In this document: one piece after another, positions 3,630 through 39,466 of the stretch
Position numbering within the stretch: position 1 is the first letter of the stretch
Layout of the letters: each line of letters opens with the position of its first letter
DNA from: Octopus bimaculoides
Lineage: Eukaryota
Reading direction: 5' to 3'
Assembly: GCF_001194135.2 (NCBI RefSeq)
Contig: NC_068987.1
Location: 11,938,627 to 11,979,426 of the forward strand
DNA: 40,800 nucleotides
Position numbers and translations under genes: made by a program
The notes under the pieces: generated by a model
What the model was told of the DNA's origin: nothing
Seen by the model: only the letters and a program-made list of their open reading frames with translations
Databases searched by the model: none

Positions 3630-4427
3630 NNNNNNNNNNNNNNNNNNNNNNNNNNNNNNNNNNNNNNNNNNNNNNNNNNNNNNNNNNNNNNNNNNNNNNN
3701 NNNNNNNNNNNNNNNNNNNNNNNNNNNNNNNNNNNNNNNNNNNNNNNNNNNNNNNNNNNNNNNNNNNNNNNNNNNNNNNNNNNNNNNNNNNNNNNNNNNN
3801 NNNNNNNNNNNNNNNNNNNNNNNNNNNNNNNNNNNNNNNNNNNNNNNNNNNNNNNNNNNNNNNNNNNNNNNNNNNNNNNNNNNNNNNNNNNNNNNNNNNN
3901 NNNNNNNNNNNNNNNNNNNNNNNNNNNNNNNNNNNNNNNNNNNNNNNNNNNNNNNNNNNNNNNNNNNNNNNNNNNNNNNNNNNNNNNNNNNNNNNNNNNN
4001 NNNNNNNNNNNNNNNNNNNNNNNNNNNNNNNNNNNNNNNNNNNNNNNNNNNNNNNNNNNNNNNNNNNNNNNNNNNNNNNNNNNNNNNNNNNNNNNNNNNN
4101 NNNNNNNNNNNNNNNNNNNNNNNNNNNNNNNNNNNNNNNNNNNNNNNNNNNNNNNNNNNNNNNNNNNNNNNNNNNNNNNNNNNNNNNNNNNNNNNNNNNN
4201 NNNNNNNNNNNNNNNNNNNNNNNNNNNNNNNNNNNNNNNNNNNNNNNNNNNNNNNNNNNNNNNNNNNNNNNNNNNNNNNNNNNNNNNNNNNNNNNNNNNN
4301 NNNNNNNNNNNNNNNNNNNNNNNNNNNATATATATATATATATATGTAGATACATATATACATATGTATATATATATATATATATGTAGATACATATATA
4401 CATATGTATATATACATATGTATATAT

Positions 4428-4533
4428 AAATTCAAATTACGATGAGCGTAAACAAACAAACGAAGTTTGCTTTAGAAGCGTTGAGATGTCATAGAAAGTT
4501 AAAAAAGAGATTTTTAAATTCTCAAACGCAGGA
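4428..4533 (+). repeat. 106-bp direct repeat, copy 1
   Basis: AAATTCAAATTACGATGAGCGTAAACAAACAAACGAAG...CTCAAACGCAGGA recurs at 4745-4850 with a few substitutions and small indels. Confidence 0.95.
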
Positions 4534-4595
4534 CAATGCTAATAATGTAGCTTGAACAGGATAAGCTACCCCTATTTTGCAGAAAAAATAAGTGT

Positions 4596-4679
4596 TGGCG
4601 GAGAGATATGAGACTCGAGCTCACACCTGCGTGATTACGCGTCGCGGTGCTCTAGACCGATTAAGCTAAACTGCTCTCC
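4596..4679 (-). pseudogene. tRNA-like sequence with encoded CCA and a Thr(CGT)-like anticodon arm
   Basis: Acceptor GGAGAG/CTCTCC-G-CCA; D-arm TAGCTTAATCGGTCTAGAGC; anticodon arm CGCGA-CGCGTAA-TCACG; T-arm GTGAG-CTCGAGT-CTCAT; a T6 run 7 nt downstream. Extra nucleotides and T54C/U33G changes argue against a canonical tRNA. Confidence 0.65.
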
Positions 4680-4744
4680 CCCGAGATTCTTCTGCAAACT
4701 TAAGATGTATAGAAATCTCGCTTTATGAGACGCTATCATACGTT

Positions 4745-4850
4745 AAATTCAAATTACGACGAACGTAAACAAACAAACGAAGTTTGCTTTTAGAAGCGTT
4801 GAGATGTCTTAGAAAGTTAAAGAAGTGATTCTAAATTCTCAAACGCAGGA
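4745..4850 (+). repeat. 106-bp direct repeat, copy 2
   Basis: Matches 4428-4533. Confidence 0.95.
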
Positions 4851-4899
4851 TATATGTATATTTATGTACATACATATATGTATATTTGTATACGTATAT

Positions 4900-4979
<80 letters not shown>

Positions 4980-6381
4980 ATACACTCACACACAAATGTA
5001 TATATTTTTATGTGACTATCAAAGTGATTTGGCTAAAACAGGATTAGGCATTGCTGTTTTGATAGATGTGAAATTCTCCAAATCAGGATTCCTAGCAAGA
5101 CAACATTAGTCTGGTCAGTTCTTCTATTATATATGATTTATTACATAGATATCTTAACGCCATAGAAGATGCATATATCACGCTAAGGCTTTTCCATTGA
5201 ACAGTGGACACAACATTAACATTTTAACAGAATCAAATATTATCACTAGCTAGTGAAACCCACTGAAAATGAATAAATCATTCTGTACATTTTAAAACTT
5301 TCTTCACTAGTTTCAGCATTTGTTTTGGGATCATACCAGATCATCCCGTTCAGAGATTTAGTCGATTAAAAGGAATCCAGTAATTATATGGAGATGCAGC
5401 ACGGAATTTTGTCAGTGAACCGATCGCGGTTTCAAAGCGATGAAAATATTTTCATAAAGTAAATTTAAATGTTGAAGTGAATCTAACGGCTTTTGTGTGT
5501 TTTTAAATGGTTTATAAACACCTTCCACGCTGCAGTTGTTTTTGTTTCAGCACACGATCTCAGATCAAGTCACGTGCTATGCAAGTACATCTCAGTGATT
5601 ATATGCTTTATATCTTATAAAATCCACAGTAAATGAAAGAGAATGTAGGCCTGTGCAAGATTTGAACTTAGAACTTAAAAGTAATGAATTACCACAAAAC
5701 GTTTTTGTCAGATACTCTACTGATTATATCAACTAGCGATTCTATAATAGAAGTTGCTTTGCATATTAGCTTCATCTGTTATATTCAGTCCAAGTTTCCT
5801 GTATGAAAACTTCTTCCCTTCCCGCTATTTATATTGAAGGCTGGTGAGAAGAAGGGAGACTATGTCCATATCTCTGTAAAAAGCTATGGGCACTATCATC
5901 CAGTGATGGAAAAGTGAGAGTTCCAACGTGACATTTGAGGTGTTTAGGGCATTTTTGAGTCTGGTACAATCCATTACATTCCAGATCTAACTACGTCGGA
6001 TTTCTTCCAGAAAAATAGTTAGAGTGATATTAAAATAAGGAATCTGCCCTTAGTACAGGCACTTTATTTATCGGTCCCCAAAAAGCATAAAAATTGAAGA
6101 CGGCCTCATTGAGATTTGAACTTACAGAAAAAAAAAAGAGAGAGCCGGAACGTTTGCCACAAAGCAATACACCAGAAACGATAATAATTCTGCCAATTAG
6201 CTGGATGTGATTTACAGTCTAGTGACTACATCAATAGAACTAGCAATGCATCTTGGGAATATGTTAAATAGGGAAAGAGGCATTGAACGCTTGATGGAAG
6301 CCAAGATATTTTAAACAATATTACTGCAAAATATAATATTCTGTTCAGTACTGTCTACCATACGCCTGTTATTTTTTTCTG

Positions 6382-6701: not shown

Positions 6702-7112
6702 GTCGCAGGCGTGGCCGTATGGTAAGAAGCTTGCTTCCCAACCACATGGTTCCGGGTTCAGTCCCACTGCGTGGCACCTTGGGCAAATGTCTTCTACTAT
6801 AGCCCCGGGTCGACCAAAGCCTTTTGAGTAGATTTGGTAGACGGAAACCGAAAGAAGCCCGTCATACACACACACACACATATATATTTATGTGTGTGTG
6901 CCTTTATGTCTGTGTTTGTCCCCCACCATCGCTTGACAACTGATGTTGGTGTGTTTACGCCCCCGTAACTGAGCGGTTCGATAAAAGATTCCGATAGAAT
7001 AAGTACTAGGCTTACAAAGAATAAGTCCTGCAGTCTATCTCTGCGACTAAAACTCCTTGAAGGCAGTGCTCCAGTATGGCCGCAATCAAATGACTGAAAC
7101 CAGTAACGGAAT
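6702..7112 (+). mobile_element. SINE family A, full-length tRNA-derived CORE-like SINE with an internal microsatellite
   Basis: A-box-like TGGCCGTATGGT, B-box-like GGTTCAGTCCC, CCTTGGGCAA CORE-like motif, internal (CA)/(TG) tract and conserved tail. Multiple copies are present in the window. Confidence 0.9.
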
Positions 7113-7125
7113 AACAGAATATATA

Positions 7126-7672
7126 CAGTTGAAAATCCTTTATATGAAATTCCAAAGCGGAAAGTTTGAAATGCTGACATGATGATACGTCACGAATGGG
7201 AAATTCTACAAAGTGCTGGAGGCTTGATGATGCTCCGGTTTTTTTTATTTTATGACCGATAGTGCGACAGCCAAAATGGCTCTGAATCAAAGCGATCCTG
7301 ATGCTAGTAATGACGATGAAGATGACATTGGGAACACATTAGGAACGATGTCCATGGATAGTACGGTGAAAATGTGCGATAGACTTATTAAAGGACGAGA
7401 ACAACTTGCATTCATTACAGAAAAAGAAATCAAATTCGTGTATAAAAATCAAAAAAGAAAGAAACTGCTACAATGAAAAATATTATTAATGAAGCGGTGA
7501 CATTGCAATGATACTTGCGTCATTGTTGCACTAATAAATATAATTCTGACATTTTCAGTTTTCATTACATTTAACTATAATTAAATTTCATATTTTGTTT
7601 TTATACGGAAATCTTTATGTTCTATAACATTTTAATCAAAACAGGATTCCCCAGATGGATACTCTCAACTTG
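7126..7672 (+). mobile_element. Internally deleted Tigger/pogo DNA transposon with a transposase C-terminal remnant
   Basis: TA|CAGTTGAAAATCC left end and GGATACTCTCAACTTG right end (degenerate TIRs). ORF 7252-7476 (LNQSDPDASNDDEDD...VKMCDRLIKGREQLAFITEKEI) resembles Tigger transposase C-termini as I recall them. Confidence 0.75.
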
Positions 7673-8795: not shown

Positions 8796-8966
8796 CACAT
8801 TGAGAACATACATACACATTGAGCGCTCACTTCTCATTCTCACTATTCGATATTAGCACATATATGTTTGTGTGTGTATGTGTGTGCATGTATGTATATA
8901 TATATGTGTGTATGTATATATCTCAATATATATGTGTGTGTGTGTATGTATATTATATATATATGT

Positions 8967-9248
8967 CTGTCCTTGGCTGGCCTCAAATCTCACCTGCGAA
9001 CCCATGGAAAACAAACCTCACCCAGCTATTCTGATTATATGTCTGTGCACACGATTGAATGTGGTGTGTGCCAGAGGGTTTGCAAATCCAATGGGGGTCT
9101 TGAAAGACATGTTAGGATCCACAATGAGCAGAACTTACTTGCGGGTATTGGTAGTGCAAATCAGAGGTGCAATCTGTGTGGGTGTTTTTTCAAAACACTG
9201 TCTGGTTTAAAAAGCCACATCAGACGCCATGAAAGGGCTAAGGTGTAG
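8967..9248 (+). pseudogene. C2H2 zinc-finger coding fragment (2.5 fingers), most likely the 3' end of a 5'-truncated LINE ORF
   Basis: Two perfect C-x2-C-x12-H-x3-H motifs (CGVC...HVRIH and CNLC...HIRRH) plus a half finger (LKSHLRTH), with long non-TGEKP linkers. Stop at 9246-9248, then about 50 bp and a TA tract. It starts abruptly at a microsatellite with no clear splice acceptor. Confidence 0.7.
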
Positions 9249-10301
9249 GTGCAGGAGGTGGTCAAACTCTGTTTAAGGAGTAGACAACCACCATATGTAT
9301 ATATANNNNNNNNNNNNNNNNNNNNNNNNNNNNNNNNNNNNNNNNNNNNNNNNNNNNNNNNNNNNNNNNNNNNNNNNNNNNNNNNNNNNNNNNNNNNNNN
9401 NNNNNNNNNNNNNNNNNNNNNNNNNNNNNNNNNNNNNNNNNNNNNNNNNNNNNNNNNNNNNNNNNNNNNNNNNNNNNNNNNNNNNNNNNNNNNNNNNNNN
9501 NNNNNNNNNNNNNNNNNNNNNNNNNNNNNNNNNNNNNNNNNNNNNNNNNNNNNNNNNNNNNNNNNNNNNNNNNNNNNNNNNNNNNNNNNNNNNNNNNNNN
9601 NNNNNNNNNNNNNNNNNNNNNNNNNNNNNNNNNNNNNNNNNNNNNNNNNNNNNNNNNNNNNNNNNNNNNNNNNNNNNNNNNNNNNNNNNNNNNNNNNNNN
9701 NNNNNNNNNNNNNNNNNNNNNNNNNNNNNNNNNNNNNNNNNNNNNNNNNNNNNNNNNNNNNNNNNNNNNNNNNNNNNNNNNNNNNNNNNNNNNNNNNNNN
9801 NNNNNNNNNNNNNNNNNNNNNNNNNNNNNNNNNNNNNNNNNNNNNNNNNNNNNNNNNNNNNNNNNNNNNNNNNNNNNNNNNNNNNNNNNNNNNNNNNNNN
9901 NNNNNNNNNNNNNNNNNNNNNNNNNNNNNNNNNNNNNNNNNNNNNNNNNNNNNNNNNNNNNNNNNNNNNNNNNNNNNNNNNNNNNNNNNNNNNNNNNNNN
10001 NNNNNNNNNNNNNNNNNNNNNNNNNNNNNNNNNNNNNNNNNNNNNNNNNNNNNNNNNNNNNNNNNNNNNNNNNNNNNNNNNNNNNNNNNNNNNNNNNNNN
10101 NNNNNNNNNNNNNNNNNNNNNNNNNNNNNNNNNNNNNNNNNNNNNNNNNNNNNNNNNNNNNNNNNNNNNNNNNNNNNNNNNNNNNNNNNNNNNNNNNNNN
10201 NNNNNNNNNNNNNNNNNNNNNNNNNNNNNNNNNNNNNNNNNNNNNNNNNNNNNNNNNNNNNNNNNNNNNNNNNNNNNNNNNNNNNNNNCACAGAGACACA
10301 G

Positions 10302-13472: not shown

Positions 13473-13901
13473 CAGTTGTTGGCTTAGCTGTGTTGCGAAA
13501 AGCACTCGTTGCAACCACATGGATTCGGGTTCAGTCCCACTGTGCAGCAAATCTAGAAAATGACTTCTAGCATAGCCCCAGACCGATCAATGCTTTGTGA
13601 ATGAATCTGGAAGAAAGAAACTATAGAAGCCCATCGTTAAAATATATGTGTGTGTGTTTGTATGTGTGTCTTTGTGCTTATACGCCGTCACACCACTTGA
13701 CAACCGGTATTGGCTTGTTTACGTCCTTGTAAGTTAGCAGTTCAGTAAAAGAGACCGAAAGGATAAGCACCCAGCTAAAAAACAAACAAACAAAAAAAAC
13801 AAATAAATGTAATGGGGGTCTATAGGTTCGACTAATCCTTTCAAGATGGTGCCCCAGCATGGCCGCAGTCCAATGACAGATACAAGTAAAAAATAGAAGA
13901 T
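13473..13901 (+). mobile_element. SINE family A, full-length, strongly diverged
   Basis: CAACCACATGGATTCGGGTTCAGTCCCACTG head, internal TG tract and GGTGCCCCAGCATGGCCGCAGTCCAATGAC tail. Confidence 0.8.
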
Positions 13902-14606
13902 AAACGAAAGAATGCTTGTAGCAGAGAAGCCGGCCCCATCCCTCCATTAAGAACACCAAAGGACCAGCGAGTGACGTTAAACGGGATGACGAAAGCATGA
14001 CAGCATTTTTGCCACTTAAATTCCCAGATTCTAAATAATACATTTATTAATCAAACGGCAGATATCAACGAAAAGAAAACGGGTTAATCTTTAGGTTACG
14101 TCAATGAACGCTGATGAGAAAAAATGTTCAAGGACGGCCTTGGATGGGCTTAATTCTTCTTCTTCTCCTCAATGACTTGAGGCAAAAGATTAACAAGACC
14201 ACCTGTTAACAAACAGACCTCAGCTGATAACTGTCGTTGTTACAATTATCAGTAAGCGACTACGTGACAAAACTCGCAGTGACTAGCTGCAAACGCACTT
14301 TTGGTATTGTCATGATTGTTCTCAGGTAAAAGATTATAACACCATGGCCAGGGGTTGTATTCCATGCGATAACCCAATTCCACAATATTTGGCAAGGGAC
14401 AATCTTAACAATGACGTCAAAACACACGCTTGCTTTTGGAGGTTGTAGTGAATTGCTCAAATATATTTTTTGCTAAACACTGATGAGGTAAGAATTAAGA
14501 AGACCATATAATGTTTCAACCGGCGATAATGTAATGCTTGCTGTTATTTGCCGAAACCTTCGTATGATTTATAAGTATAAAAATGATATACTATAATTAC
14601 AATAGT

Positions 14607-14904: not shown

Positions 14905-15748
14905 GAATGTACCTCATATTTCATTGTCTCCGAACGAAATGAAAGGCAAAGATGGCCTTGGTGGCTTTTGAACTCAGAACGTTAAGACAGGCAAAATGCC
15001 GCTAAGCGTTTTTCCGACGCTCTAAAGATTTTACAAGCTCACTGTCTTACACAGCAGTAAAATAACCCTTTCTACTATAGGTACAACGCCTGATATCTGG
15101 AGGGAGGGGACGACTCGATTATACCGACTTAGTACTTGACTAGGTCTTATTTCATCGACCCCTAAAGGATGAAAGGCGAAGTTGCCCTTGGCGGATTTTG
15201 AACCCAGAACGTAAAGACGGCCGCAGTACCACGAAACAGTTTGTCCGACGTTCTAAGGATTCTGCAAGCTCGTTGTCTTACACAGTATTAAAATAATTCT
15301 GTCTATTATAGGTAGAACGCCTGAAATTTTGGGGGGTTTAGGGGACGACTCGATTTATATCGACCCAGCTTTCGACTGGATCTTATTTCATCGACCTCAA
15401 AAGGATGAAAGGTTACATCGACCTCGGTGGCACTTGAACTTAGAACGTAGAGACGGAAGAAATGTTGCTAAGCATTTTGTTCGGCGCGTAAACGATTCTG
15501 CCTAGTCGCTGCCGGAGATAAAGCGGTAAAATAATGCTTTCTACCATAGGCACAAAGCCTTAAATTTGGGGGACCGGGCTAGTAGATTACACCGACCCCA
15601 GTGCTCAACTGGTACTTATTTCATTGACCCCGAAAGGATGAAAGACAAAGTCGACATCGGTGGAATTTGAACACAGAACATAACGGCAGACGAAATACCG
15701 CTAAGCATTTCGCCCGGTCTGCTAACGTTTCTGCCAGCTCGCCGCTTT
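14905..15748 (-). mobile_element. Head-to-tail array of four family B SINE units, period about 230 bp
   Basis: Four GAAAGG..TTTGAAC..GAACGTAA cores on the same strand. The junction TCTTACACAG repeats at 15045-15054 and 15276-15285. Confidence 0.9.
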
Positions 15749-16819: not shown

Positions 16820-17467
16820 NNNNNNNNNNNNNNNNNNNNNNNNNNNNNNNNNNNNNNNNNNNNNNNNNNNNNNNNNNNNNNNNNNNNNNNNNNNNNNNNN
16901 NNNNNNNNNNNNNNNNNNNNNNNNNNNNNNNNNNNNNNNNNNNNNNNNNNNNNNNNNNNNNNNNNNNNNNNNNNNNNNNNNNNNNNNNNNNNNNNNNNNN
17001 NNNNNNNNNNNNNNNNNNNNNNNNNNNNNNNNNNNNNNNNNNNNNNNNNNNNNNNNNNNNNNNNNNNNNNNNNNNNNNNNNNNNNNNNNNNNNNNNNNNN
17101 NNNNNNNNNNNNNNNNNNNNNNNNNNNNNNNNNNNNNNNNNNNNNNNNNNNNNNNNNNNNNNNNNNNNNNNNNNNNNNNNNNNNNNNNNNNNNNNNNNNN
17201 NNNNNNNNNNNNNNNNNNNNNNNNNNNNNNNNNNNNNNNNNNNNNNNNNNNNNNNNNNNNNNNNNNNNNNNNNNNNNNNNNNNNNNNNNNNNNNNNNNNN
17301 NNNNNNNNNNNNNNNNNNNNNNNNNNNNNNNNNNNNNNNNNNNNNNNNNNNNNNNNNNNNNNNNNNNNNNNNNNNNNNNNNNNNNNNNNNNNNNNNNNNN
17401 NNNNNNNNNNNNNNNNNNNNNNNNNNNNNNNNNNNNNNNNNNNNNNNNNNNNNNNNNNNNNNNNNNN

Positions 17468-19110: not shown

Positions 19111-19579
19111 TGTTGCTACTGCTGATGTTGCCACTTAACCTCAGAGATTATGTGGAGGTAATAGTCGTTGGTTGATGTTGCTCGTTGTGATGATATTAGT
19201 GCTGGTGGTAGTAGAATTTGTGTTAACCAGAACCTAAGATATTCTCGTAAACAGATGTGCTTCTCGGTGGGGATAGCTTTATCTGTTTTTTTTTTCTTCT
19301 TTGTTTGTGTATTTTGTTTTTCATTTACATTTTTGTTTTGTTCTGTTTGAAGATAAGCGAAAAGCAGTGGTGAACGATAAGTGTTACACCACGTGAATGA
19401 ATGCGTTTGCAGTTGTGTCATTATAAACGTTGTTTTTGTTATTCAGCCCCCAGGTCGACCTCAATTAAGAAAGCTTTATAGTCAAAGGGCAATCGAGTCG
19501 TGACCATCACGTTTTATTTTCAAAACCAGTGTTATTCATAGAACTACATTAACCGAAAGTTTCTTTTCATTTCTTAAAC

Positions 19580-19941
19580 AGGCGCAGGTGTGGCTGTGTT
19601 GTAAATAGCTTGCTTAACAACCACATGGTTACGAGTTCAATCCCACTGCGTGGCACCTTGGGCAAGTGTCTTCTACTATAGCCTCGGGCCGACAAAAGCC
19701 TTGTGAGTGGATTTGGTAGACGGAAACTGAAAGAAGTCCTTCGTATATGTGTGTGTGTATTTGTCCTCCCAAAATCGCTTGACAACCGAAGCGGTGTGTT
19801 TACATCCCCGTAACCTAGCGGTTCCGCAAAAAAAAAAAAGAAAGATAGAATAAGTACTAGGCTTACAAAAAGAACGGTAGAATAAGTACCAGGCTGACAA
19901 AGAATAACTGAAGGCGGTGCTCCAGCATAGCCGCAGTCAAA
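19580..19941 (+). mobile_element. SINE family A, near full-length
   Basis: AGGCGCAGGTGTGGCTGTGTTGT head through GGCGGTGCTCCAGCATAGCCGCAGTCAAA tail. Confidence 0.9.
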
Positions 19942-20039
19942 GTTTACATCACCCCTTCTTTCCTTATTCATCTATCACCCTTTCCTTTCTCATTCATATG
20001 CTGTGACGGAGAAAAATACAAGAGTATTATTATAGTAGA

Positions 20040-22164: not shown

Positions 22165-22520
22165 CAAAGGTTCTCAACGGGGGCCATTTGGAGCTCGGTT
22201 GGGCGTTTTGGAACAAAGGGGCATGGGAGGGGGGGCGTTAAAAGATTTGTGGGGAGTTAAAAGACTTGGGGAGCGTTAAAAGACTTGGGGAGCGTTAAAA
22301 GACTTGGGGGCGCTTGGGGCCGCTGGAAGATCCTCAGCTTTGGTAAGTTTAATTTGAAATTAACGAGTAGCGGCCATATTTTCACATCTCTGTGACAGTT
22401 TAAAAAAAAAAACATGTCATTTTGTTTCAAATTTTCAAAAACTTAAAACACTTTTTCCACTTTAACGACCCCAAGCAAATTCCTGGTACCATGTGGTGTC
22501 GCTAAAGTGAAACCTCCAAA
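22165..22520. mobile_element. Possible hAT/Charlie-like fragment
   Basis: CAAAGGTTCTCAAC resembles the Charlie-type terminus CAGGGGTTCTCAA. No matching other end or TSD was found. Confidence 0.3.
22237..22312 (+). repeat. 19-bp G-rich minisatellite, 4 units
   Basis: GTTAAAAGACTTGGGGAGC-type units start at 22237, 22256, 22275 and 22294. Confidence 0.92.
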
Positions 22521-28459: not shown

Positions 28460-28719
28460 CACATATGCACGTGTATATATCTATACATATATATGTATGA
28501 GTGCGTGTGTGCGTATATATATTCATATATATATGTACATACATATATGCATATACAGATAAACACAAACACACATACGTGTGTTTGTGTGTACATATTT
28601 ATATGTATATATTTATATGTGCGTATATCTATGTATATGCATGTGTGTATGTATACACGCACACAAACACACATATATATATATATGCATGTGTAAGTGT
28701 GTTTTCTANNNNNNNNNNN

Positions 28720-37173: not shown

Positions 37174-37291
37174 AGATTAGACAATCAAATTGAATAATCA
37201 TGTACCCATTTGGTAAAGATTAGACAATCAAATTGAATAACCATATACCTATTTGGTATATGATTATATAATAATCATATACCTATTTGGT
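37174..37291 (+). repeat. About 43-bp tandem repeat, two full units and one partial
   Basis: AGATTAGACAATCAAATTGAATAA..CAT.TACC.ATTTGGT at 37174 and 37217; partial unit at about 37271. Confidence 0.9.
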
Positions 37292-38438: not shown

Positions 38439-39466
38439 NNNNNNNNNNNNNNNNNNNNNNNNNNNNNNNNNNNNNNNNNNNNNNNNNNNNNNNNNNNNNN
38501 NNNNNNNNNNNNNNNNNNNNNNNNNNNNNNNNNNNNNNNNNNNNNNNNNNNNNNNNNNNNNNNNNNNNNNNNNNNNNNNNNNNNNNNNNNNNNNNNNNNN
38601 NNNNNNNNNNNNNNNNNNNNNNNNNNNNNNNNNNNNNNNNNNNNNNNNNNNNNNNNNNNNNNNNNNNNNNNNNNNNNNNNNNNNNNNNNNNNNNNNNNNN
38701 NNNNNNNNNNNNNNNNNNNNNNNNNNNNNNNNNNNNNNNNNNNNNNNNNNNNNNNNNNNNNNNNNNNNNNNNNNNNNNNNNNNNNNNNNNNNNNNNNNNN
38801 NNNNNNNNNNNNNNNNNNNNNNNNNNNNNNNNNNNNNNNNNNNNNNNNNNNNNNNNNNNNNNNNNNNNNNNNNNNNNNNNNNNNNNNNNNNNNNNNNNNN
38901 NNNNNNNNNNNNNNNNNNNNNNNNNNNNNNNNNNNNNNNNNNNNNNNNNNNNNNNNNNNNNNNNNNNNNNNNNNNNNNNNNNNNNNNNNNNNNNNNNNNN
39001 NNNNNNNNNNNNNNNNNNNNNNNNNNNNNNNNNNNNNNNNNNNNNNNNNNNNNNNNNNNNNNNNNNNNNNNNNNNNNNNNNNNNNNNNNNNNNNNNNNNN
39101 NNNNNNNNNNNNNNNNNNNNNNNNNNNNNNNNNNNNNNNNNNNNNNNNNNNNNNNNNNNNNNNNNNNNNNNNNNNNNNNNNNNNNNNNNNNNNNNNNNNN
39201 NNNNNNNNNNNNNNNNNNNNNNNNNNNNNNNNNNNNNNNNNNNNNNNNNNNNNNNNNNNNNNNNNNNNNNNNNNNNNNNNNNNNNNNNNNNNNNNNNNNN
39301 NNNNNNNNNNNNNNNNNNNNNNNNNNNNNNNNNNNNNNNNNNNNNNNNNNNNNNNNNNNNNNNNNNNNNNNNNNNNNNNNNNNNNNNNNNNNNNNNNNNN
39401 NNNNNNNNNNNNNNNNNNNNNNNNNNNNNNNNNNNATGTATGTATGTATATATATATATATATATA

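What the first reader, a model, noticed from the sequence alone, without database searches (positions are those of the whole stretch)
4428..4850. CCA-ending tRNA-like cassette bracketed by 106-bp direct repeats
Seen: DR(106) - 211-bp interior - DR(106), embedded in TA-rich microsatellite on both sides. The interior holds an 84-nt cloverleaf-like sequence on the minus strand (4679-4596) with genomically encoded CCA, a CGT anticodon loop and a T6 run just downstream. It also holds a 7-bp hairpin, GTAGCTT/AAGCTAC (about 4548-4569). Established: eukaryotic nuclear tRNA genes normally do not encode CCA, and a GGAGAG/CTCTCC-G-CCA acceptor is the style of bacterial tRNA-Ser. Inference: a miniature LTR-like (TRIM-type) or recombinase-type element carrying a Pol III cassette, a remnant of a 317-bp tandem array of tRNA-like units, or a tRNA captured by reverse transcription or from foreign DNA. 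It matches none of the SINE families in this window.
Basis: partly seen in the sequence, partly recalled or inferred. Interest (0 to 1): 0.7.

Follow-up and report, generated by a model that had tools for sequence, protein, structure and literature searches.

The report
Decayed tRNA-Thr-like pseudogene in short duplication
A worn-out copy of a threonine tRNA gene sits in a 317-bp piece of DNA that is present one and a third times in a row inside a TA-rich microsatellite. It looks like ordinary repeat debris of a probable octopus genome, not a new kind of mobile element.

Summary
The layout is real. Two 107-nt direct repeats (4427-4533 and 4744-4850; 6 substitutions and 2 one-base indels) bracket a 210-bp interior, and the same compound TA/TG microsatellite lies on both sides.

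The interior holds a tRNA-like sequence on the minus strand, but it is sub-threshold:
- Rfam tRNA scores 21.2 bits against a cut-off of 29.
- ARAGORN finds nothing by default. At 95% of its threshold it calls tRNA-Thr(cgt) at 4600-4676.
- Defects: two acceptor mismatches, G33, C54, extra linker bases and a C·A anticodon-stem mismatch. It folds no better than shuffles (z = -0.47).

The "encoded CCA" is one base out of the canonical register, and its two C's can pair with an upstream G-run. A T6 run lies 11 nt after the tRNA end, as in a native Pol III gene.

None of the sequence hallmarks that can be judged here for TRIM/LTR, SINE, Helitron or hammerhead elements is met. The 4-bp flank match is uninformative. 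No bacterial, plasmid, phage or viral match was found. No second copy exists in the window or in any searchable collection.

Best reading: a dead tRNA-Thr-like gene copy in 1.34 units of a 317-bp repeat, lodged in a microsatellite.

The parts
3630..4327 (.). Assembly gap of 698 N, lying 100 bp left of the block. What lies beyond the left microsatellite is unknown.
4328..4426 (.). Left compound TA/TG microsatellite, 40-bp period x 2.5. It contains the motif ATGTAGATACATATAT twice.
4427..4533 (+). Direct repeat copy 1 (A), 107 nt
4534..4743 (.). Interior (B), 210 bp, unique in the window
4547..4569 (.). 7-bp perfect hairpin GTAGCTT-(9 nt)-AAGCTAC, downstream of the T-run on the minus strand. Its statistical weight is low.
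   Evidence: I13
4583..4588 (-). T6 run, a Pol III terminator-like signal, 11 nt after the tRNA-like 3' end at C4600
4596..4598 (-). The 'CCA' triplet. It follows C4600-G4599, so it is one base beyond the canonical position 74-76. Its two C's can pair with the upstream G-run.
   Evidence: I7
4600..4676 (-). tRNA-Thr(CGU)-like pseudogene, 77 nt. The D arm is GCTT/GAGC with G18G19, and the T arm is GTGAG-CTCGAGT-CTCAT. Defects: acceptor mismatches C·T and A·C, a 3-nt 8-9 linker, an extra base at position 26, a C·A mismatch in the anticodon stem, G33 and C54.
   Evidence: ARAGORN at 95% threshold; Rfam RF00005 21.2 bits at 4604-4672
4744..4850 (+). Direct repeat copy 2 (A'), 107 nt, 92.6% identical to copy 1
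4851..4979 (.). Right compound microsatellite, TA/TATG-type then (TG)24. It contains ATGTACATACATATAT in the same orientation as the left flank.

Best explanation
The block is 1.34 head-to-tail units (A-B-A') of a 317-bp sequence. The unit contains one eroded nuclear-type tRNA-Thr(CGU)-like gene copy that still has a downstream T-run. The block lies inside a single compound TA/TG microsatellite.

Shown:
- the repeat geometry;
- that the tRNA-like sequence is tRNA-derived and which defects it carries;
- the absence of the assessable LTR, SINE, Helitron and ribozyme hallmarks;
- the shared microsatellite motif on both sides.

Inferred:
- The block arose at the DNA level. Either it is a fragment of a short tandem array of tRNA-gene-plus-spacer units, or a local tandem duplication was later trimmed.
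- It either came to lie in a break-prone TA-rich microsatellite or was inserted into one.
- It has since decayed neutrally (4 transitions, 2 transversions and 2 indels between A and A').
- It has no function of its own. If the weakened A and B boxes still recruit Pol III, the product would be an RNA of roughly 90-100 nt ending at the T-run. That RNA could not act as a tRNA because of G33, C54 and the broken acceptor and anticodon stems. It would not include the direct repeats, so it could not propagate the block by retroposition.
For: - Repeat geometry and identity.
- tRNA derivation: Rfam 21.2 bits. The E-value is 0.014 for the 111-bp search against all 4227 families, which I scale to about 1e-3 for the tRNA family alone over the whole window.
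- ARAGORN calls tRNA-Thr(cgt) at 95% threshold. It is the only hit in the window, with 0 hits in 1.4 Mb of shuffled sequence.
- Pseudogene status: below both programs' default thresholds, fold z = -0.47, and the defects visible in the ARAGORN drawing.
- Native-gene layout: T6 lies 11 nt after the 3' end, and about 60 bp of non-tRNA sequence lies upstream within the unit.
- One interrupted microsatellite: the motif ATGTASATACATATAT occurs at 4344, 4384 and 4864 on the same strand, and elsewhere only near 28530. Expected by chance: 0.01.
- No further degenerate units in the flanks.
- No foreign match.
- A second tandemised SINE-like repeat at 14939-15710 shows that such tandemisation happens in this genome.
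Against: - Only 1.34 units are present, so a 'tandem array' is an extrapolation.
- A-B-A' is not the product of a single simple tandem duplication. It needs either an insertion of an array fragment or two steps.
- Terminal direct repeats are also what LTR-type elements and long target-site duplications produce.
- The block is CpG-rich compared with its surroundings: observed/expected 1.53 against 0.86, and its CpG count is in the top 5% of 424-bp tiles. That is not what a very old, methylated relic should show.
No other copy was retrievable from any collection.
Confidence: 0.5

Rival explanations
1. A short satellite-like array that was dispersed by, or belongs to, a non-autonomous mobile element. 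Examples of the kind are the tandem-repeat-containing MITE / Helentron elements of molluscs (pearl, DTC84, Cg_HINE). Alternatively it was re-inserted after rolling-circle copying of a 317-bp circle, with TA-rich microsatellite as target.
For: - Mollusc elements of this kind carry 1-5 core repeats joined to a microsatellite, and each repeat holds a palindrome near the unit junction (PMC3879986; PMC7492417).
- Here a fractional array abuts microsatellite on both sides.
- A 7-bp palindrome lies 14 bp from the A|B junction.
- The relative CpG richness would fit a younger insertion.
Against: - No flanking left or right modules, no terminal inverted repeats, no Helitron-type TC...CTRR ends and no 3' subterminal hairpin at the block ends.
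- The described families are from bivalves and insects, not cephalopods.
- No second copy in 35 kb of sequenced window, nor in the protein or contig collections.
Confidence: 0.2
2. Assembly effect. The true locus holds a longer 317-bp tandem array that a short-read assembler collapsed to 1.34 units, or A' is a misplaced piece.
For: - The scaffold has 12 N-gaps in 40.8 kb, one of them 100 bp from the block.
- Short-read assemblers collapse tandem arrays (general knowledge).
Against: - A and A' differ at 8 of 108 columns, and the longest run of columns without a difference is 24 nt. Any assembler with k of 31 or more can therefore tell them apart.
- There is no gap inside the block.
- B is unique.
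Confidence: 0.1
3. A miniature LTR-type retroelement (a TRIM / TRIMp3 relative) whose Pol III unit sits antisense in the internal region instead of in the LTRs.
For: - Terminal direct repeats of 107 nt around a 210-bp interior fall within the TRIM size range.
- The 4-bp flanks are TATA/TATA. Animal Helenus elements make 4-bp duplications (PMC10886601).
- On the + strand the complement of the tRNA-like 3' end reads TGGCGGAGAG, which resembles a primer-binding site, and it is preceded by a purine run, AGAAAAAATAAG.
Against: - No TG...CA ends.
- The PBS-like TGG lies 62 bp from repeat A instead of 0-5 bp.
- There is no polypurine tract next to A'.
- There is no tRNA-like sequence in the repeats.
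- The flank match is expected by chance in a TA repeat.
- No other copies were found.
Confidence: 0.06
4. A functional Pol III gene for a non-canonical tRNA-like small RNA.
For: - The A box TAGCTTAATCGG is close to consensus.
- The B box keeps G53, T55, C56, A58 and C61.
- The T6 terminator is correctly placed.
- CpGs are retained in the tRNA-like part, observed/expected 1.28.
Against: - G33, C54 and mismatched acceptor and anticodon stems.
- No thermodynamic preference for the cloverleaf.
- Below the Rfam and ARAGORN thresholds.
- No conservation data.
Confidence: 0.04

Closest known systems
Nuclear tRNA pseudogenes and tandemly duplicated tRNA gene units in animal genomes
   Same: - A tRNA-derived core with recognisable D and T arms and A/B-box remnants.
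- A T-run terminator about 11 nt after the 3' end.
- Gene plus spacer repeated head to tail.
   Different: - Only 1.34 units are present.
- The copy scores below the detection thresholds.
- The block is embedded in a microsatellite.
- No intact parent gene was available for comparison.
Helenus / TRIMp3: TRIMs with a tRNA-derived Pol III promoter (Kojima 2024, PMC10886601)
   Same: - A small element-like layout of two direct repeats around a short interior, with a tRNA-like sequence.
[quoted passage not shown]
- Animal Helenus elements make 4-bp target duplications.
   Different: - In Helenus the tRNA-like part lies inside each LTR, and a PBS and a PPT lie between the LTRs.
- Here the repeats carry no tRNA-like sequence, there is no PBS or PPT, and there are no TG...CA ends.
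- In the part of the paper read here (section 3.3) the only mollusc Helenus listed are from pteriomorph bivalves; no cephalopod is listed.
Tandem-repeat-containing MITEs / Helentron non-autonomous elements of molluscs: pearl, DTC84, Cg_HINE (PMC3879986, PMC7492417)
   Same: - A short, fractional tandem array next to microsatellite.
- A palindrome near a unit junction.
- Host phylum Mollusca.
   Different: - Core repeats of those elements are roughly 160 bp (from memory, not read here) and, as far as I know, carry no tRNA-like part (neither abstract read here mentions one).
- They have defined left and right flanking modules and characteristic termini. None is seen here.
tRNA-derived SINEs (for example cephalopod SINE families)
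   Same: - A Pol III A/B-box head derived from a tRNA.
- A host genome rich in such elements.
   Different: - The tRNA-like part is not at the 5' end of the repeated unit.
- A T6 terminator follows it at once.
- There is no LINE-type or A-rich tail.
- The 107-nt 'flanking repeats' are far too long for the usual target duplication.
- No similarity to the SINE-like repeats in the window.

Membership tests
Canonical tRNA gene (Rfam RF00005 / ARAGORN) | Score at or above the curated threshold | tested here: not met
   Rfam gives 21.2 bits against a gathering score of 29. ARAGORN finds 0 genes at default and calls the sequence only at 95% threshold or lower.
Canonical tRNA gene (Rfam RF00005 / ARAGORN) | Cloverleaf with a 7-bp acceptor stem, 2-nt 8-9 linker, U33 and T54 | tested here: not met
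   The acceptor stem has 4 Watson-Crick pairs, 1 G·U pair and 2 mismatches. The linker is 3 nt. G33 and C54 are present, and the anticodon stem has a C·A mismatch. The fold z-score is -0.47.
Canonical tRNA gene (Rfam RF00005 / ARAGORN) | Internal A and B boxes and a downstream T-run, as in a eukaryotic Pol III gene | tested here: inconclusive
   The A box TAGCTTAATCGG is near consensus. The B box AGCTCGAGTCT has 3 departures. T6 lies 11 nt downstream. Promoter activity was not testable.
   In the canonical register the 3' end is C4600, followed by G then CCA. The two C's can pair with the upstream G-run (I7). A terminator and about 60 bp of 5' flank are present.
Bacterial tRNA-Ser / foreign origin | Long variable arm and a close match in prokaryotic, plasmid or phage DNA | tested here: not met
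   The variable loop is 5 nt and the isotype call is Thr. There are 0 exact matches of the D-arm 21-mer and of the 3' 23-mer in GTDB genomes, and 0 of the D-arm 21-mer in viral contigs. BLAST of the 424-bp block found nothing in phages or plasmids.
TRIM / LTR retroelement | LTRs that begin with TG and end with CA | tested here: not met
   The repeats read TAAATTC...GCAGGA on the + strand and TCCTGCG...GAATTTA on the - strand.
TRIM / LTR retroelement | A primer-binding site (TGG...) directly after the 5' LTR and a polypurine tract directly before the 3' LTR | tested here: not met
   On the + strand CAATGCTAAT follows A, and GCTATCATACGT precedes A'. On the - strand ACGTATGATA follows the 5' repeat, and TTATTAGCATTG precedes the 3' repeat. 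The only TGG-type complement lies 62 bp from A.
TRIM / LTR retroelement | 4-6-bp target-site duplication | tested here: inconclusive
   The 4-bp flanks TATA|...|TATA match and the 5-bp flanks do not. A match is expected by chance inside a TA microsatellite.
Helenus / TRIMp3 | tRNA- or 5S-derived Pol III promoter inside the LTRs | tested here: not met
   The only tRNA hit in 4300-5000 is in the interior. The definition comes from PMC10886601.
tRNA-derived SINE | tRNA head at the 5' end, then a body, then a LINE-type or simple-repeat tail, with short target duplications | tested here: not met
   On the minus strand, rc(A') and about 60 bp of interior (about 170 bp of the block) precede the tRNA-like part. 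T6 follows it directly. The block ends in the 107-nt repeat and has no tail.
tRNA-derived SINE / any interspersed family | Many dispersed copies in the genome | not testable with these tools
   The host genome is in no searchable collection. There is one copy in the window. No hits in metagenome contigs or in the protein database queried with six-frame ORFs.
Satellite / tandem repeat | At least 2 head-to-tail units | tested here: inconclusive
   Only 1.34 units are present. TRF does not report them. There are no degenerate units in the flanks. A gap lies 100 bp to the left.
Helitron / Helentron non-autonomous element | 5' TC and 3' CTRR termini with a subterminal 3' hairpin, inserted between A and T | tested here: not met
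   The minus-strand 5' end is TC after an A, but there is no CTRR end and no hairpin near either terminus.
Hammerhead-bearing tandem repeats (metazoan retrozymes) | A hammerhead ribozyme motif in each unit | tested here: not met
   The Rfam scan of 4300-5000 at E up to 10 lists no hammerhead family.

The most novel reading that the evidence does not exclude
A previously undescribed non-autonomous element of cephalopods. It would have 107-nt terminal direct repeats and an internal, antisense tRNA-Thr-derived Pol III unit, making it a TRIMp3-like layout with the promoter outside the repeats. It would insert into TA-rich microsatellites.
Probability: 0.05. Interest if true: 0.55.

Novelty: new member of a known kind. 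Interest (0 to 1): 0.18.

Why it matters
It matters little by itself. It is an example of how tRNA-derived debris and small duplications accumulate next to unstable microsatellites in a repeat-rich, probably octopod, genome.

It is also a caution for annotation. Relaxed tRNA finders will call it tRNA-Thr(CGU), and an apparent 'encoded CCA' can arise from a shifted helix register.

It would become interesting only if a genome-wide search showed many A-B-A copies with target-site duplications. That would add a new architecture to the Pol III-promoter-bearing TRIM-like elements, and it would show targeting of microsatellites.

Tried and rejected
No read depth, long-read, junction or small-RNA check was possible, read laying could not be used, and I did not try to work around this.
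- Other copies by exact DNA pattern, all 0 hits:
  - D-arm 21-mer in viral contigs, metagenome contigs and prokaryote genomes;
  - a 27-mer from the direct repeat in metagenome contigs;
  - a 23-mer from the tRNA-like 3' end in prokaryote genomes.
- Other copies through spurious ORFs: a concatenated six-frame translation of the block found nothing in the 5.8-billion-protein set.
- Exact-product look-ups of window ORFs and of the two protein hits found nothing on record.
- Foreign origin: BLAST against phages and plasmids gave no match.
- Organism: the C2H2 ORF had no homologue. Searching the literature for strings of the SINE-like tandem repeat found nothing. A concatenated repeat-ORF query did hit an Octopus bimaculoides UniRef protein, so an octopod origin is a supported lead and is not proven.
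- Rejected readings: SINE head, TRIM/Helenus, Helitron, hammerhead retrozyme, bacterial tRNA-Ser and CCA-bearing retrocopy (see the membership tests).
- Degenerate extra units in the flanks: Smith-Waterman scores were no better than shuffles.
- A 12-nt inverted repeat around the tRNA-like part (92% complementary, perfect 9-bp core TTTGCAGAA/TTCTGCAAA, I3), and its relative inside the direct repeat (I1, I8), were noted. I judged them too short to interpret.

Full report
**What is in the sequence.** Positions 4427-4533 and 4744-4850 are direct repeats of 107 nt each. They align over 108 columns with 6 substitutions (4 transitions, 2 transversions) and 2 one-base indels, which is 92.6% identity. 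The start-to-start spacing is 317-318 bp. They enclose 210 bp (4534-4743) that occur nowhere else in the window.

The block is therefore A-B-A', or 1.34 units of a 317-bp sequence. Tandem Repeats Finder does not list it. Smith-Waterman comparison of the unit with about 1 kb of left flank and 1.5 kb of right flank gives scores no better than shuffles, so no further decayed units are adjacent. A 698-N assembly gap starts 100 bp to the left.

**The flanks.** Both sides are compound TA/TG microsatellite. Only about 2% of the window's 40-mers have this character. The 16-nt motif ATGTASATACATATAT occurs twice on the left (4344, 4384) and once on the right (4864), all on the same strand. Elsewhere it occurs only near 28530, against 0.01 matches expected by chance. 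The block thus appears to interrupt one pre-existing compound microsatellite. Removing it would leave ...GTATATA|TATATGTATA..., a continuous repeat.

**The tRNA-like part.**
- ARAGORN at default settings finds no tRNA in the window, and no Rfam family reaches its gathering score.
- In E-value mode, Rfam's tRNA model matches 4604-4672 on the minus strand at 21.2 bits (gathering score 29), covering model positions 4-67. The D and T arms align well and the anticodon arm aligns poorly.
- With ARAGORN's threshold lowered to 95%, a single call appears: tRNA-Thr(cgt), 77 nt, at c[4600,4676]. It is the only call in the whole window, and none appears in 40 block-shuffled copies of the window.

The sequence is therefore tRNA-derived beyond chance at this scale, but it is damaged:
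- the acceptor stem has two mismatches and one G·U pair;
- three bases, not two, link the acceptor and D stems;
- there is an extra base at position 26;
- the anticodon stem has a C·A mismatch;
- position 33 is G instead of the universal U;
- position 54 is C instead of T.

Shuffles average -22.5, giving z = -0.47, and 62 of 200 shuffles fold at least as well. The cloverleaf itself is worth only -16.4 kcal/mol.

**The CCA.** That helix leaves 7 nt before the D stem and 2 nt after the T stem. Because of the GAGAG/CTCTC periodicity, a second register exists with canonical geometry, and this is the one ARAGORN picks. There the tRNA ends at C4600 and the genome continues G-C-C-A, so the CCA is one base out of place. 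My estimate is that a CCA triplet within a few registers of a 3' end is about a 5% event, so this is weak evidence.

Against a retrocopy of a mature tRNA, the unit keeps about 60 bp of non-tRNA sequence 5' of the tRNA-like part. It also has a T6 run 11 nt after its 3' end, which is the normal layout of a nuclear Pol III gene.

Against a bacterial source, the variable loop has 5 nt and so is not Ser-type. Neither the D-arm 21-mer nor the 3' 23-mer occurs in 185,579 prokaryotic genomes. The D-arm 21-mer is also absent from viral contigs. BLAST of the whole block finds nothing in phages or plasmids.

**Mobile-element tests.**
- LTR/TRIM: the repeats lack TG...CA ends on either strand. The bases next to the repeats are not a TGG-type primer-binding site or a polypurine tract in either orientation. 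The 4-bp flank identity (TATA) is uninformative in a TA repeat.
- Helenus/TRIMp3: these are the described TRIMs with a tRNA-like Pol III promoter. They carry that sequence inside the LTRs and have a PBS and a PPT (PMC10886601). Here the repeats hold no tRNA-like sequence.
- SINE: on the minus strand the tRNA-like part is preceded by the reverse complement of A' plus about 60 bp of interior (about 170 bp of the block). It is followed at once by a terminator. A Pol III transcript could therefore not contain the repeats, and there is no tail.
- Helitron/Helentron: there are no CTRR termini and no subterminal hairpin.
- Hammerhead retrozyme: no hammerhead family appears even at E up to 10.
- Mollusc tandem-repeat-containing MITEs and Helentron non-autonomous elements (PMC3879986, PMC7492417): they resemble the locus in joining short fractional arrays to microsatellites and in having palindromes near unit junctions. 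Their flanking modules and termini are absent here.

**Other copies and host.** No other copy could be retrieved:
- none in the window;
- none in metagenome contigs;
- none among predicted proteins, using a concatenated six-frame query;
- exact-product look-ups failed.

Copy number, long-read support and expression therefore remain untested.

The host is a gap-rich, microsatellite-rich eukaryotic scaffold. A repeat family present three times in the window matches a stretch of a UniRef protein of Octopus bimaculoides (55% identity, pairwise E 6e-17). An octopod origin is thus a supported lead.

**One unexplained point.** The block is CpG-rich relative to the window. Its observed/expected ratio is 1.53 against 0.86, and its 23 CpGs put it in the top 5% of 424-bp tiles. 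The numbers are small. They fit a not-very-old or unmethylated sequence better than an ancient relic.

**Verdict.** The tRNA call is a sub-threshold pseudogene and the 'encoded CCA' is not robust.

The most likely account, with confidence about 0.5, has three parts:
1. The block is a dead tRNA-Thr-like gene copy with spacer, present as 1.34 units.
2. It arose by DNA-level duplication or by insertion of an array fragment into a fragile TA-rich microsatellite.
3. It has no function of its own.

A dispersed, element-borne short array (0.2), assembly collapse (0.1), a TRIM-like element (0.06) and a functional small RNA (0.04) remain as rivals. A genome-wide count of A, B and A-B-A arrangements and an orthologous empty site would settle it.

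Noticed in passing
window 14939-15710: There are 3.3 head-to-tail copies of a 231-236-bp SINE-like unit. The minus strand carries a Pol III B-box-like GTTCTGAGTTCAAA and a conserved CTTTCATCCTTTCGGGGTC...AAATAAGTACCAG segment. This is a second tandemised repeat of apparently Pol III (SINE-like) type in the same window.
   Followed up: partly
window 6797-7180, 13678-14043, 19567-19971 (minus strand): Three copies of an interspersed repeat. Its translation (…FVSLVLILS…EPL.YG.VNTP…) matches residues 138-196 of a UniRef 'VPS51 homolog' of Octopus bimaculoides. That stretch is probably an exonised repeat in that gene model. It is the only tool-based clue to the host organism.
   Followed up: partly
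window 8868-9248 (+): A 126-aa ORF with two C2H2 zinc fingers (Pfam zf-C2H2, E 3e-10), wedged between microsatellites and an assembly gap. It has no homologue in the protein database.
   Followed up: partly
window 4427-4850: The block is CpG-rich for its surroundings. Observed/expected CpG is 1.53 against 0.86 for the window, and about 2.1 in each 31-33% GC direct repeat. This is unexplained and the counts are small.
   Followed up: partly
window 4463-4477, 4576-4587, 4687-4701, 4780-4787: A short motif, AAGTTTGC(A/T)..AGAA, recurs in each direct repeat and, inverted, on both sides of the tRNA-like part (the perfect 9-bp core is TTTGCAGAA/TTCTGCAAA). It is too short to judge. It could be a microhomology used in the rearrangement.
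   Followed up: no
window, 12 N-gaps (e.g. 3630-4327, 9306-10288, 16820-17467, 38439-39435): Most of the larger assembly gaps directly abut TA, CA/TG or other simple repeats. The scaffold is therefore systematically broken at simple repeats, and the repeat content next to the gaps is under-represented.
   Followed up: no
window 22230-22310 and 37174-37266: Two small minisatellites: a 19-bp unit, GGGGGGCGTTAAAAGACTT, x 4.3, and a 43-bp unit x 2.1. They were not examined.
   Followed up: no
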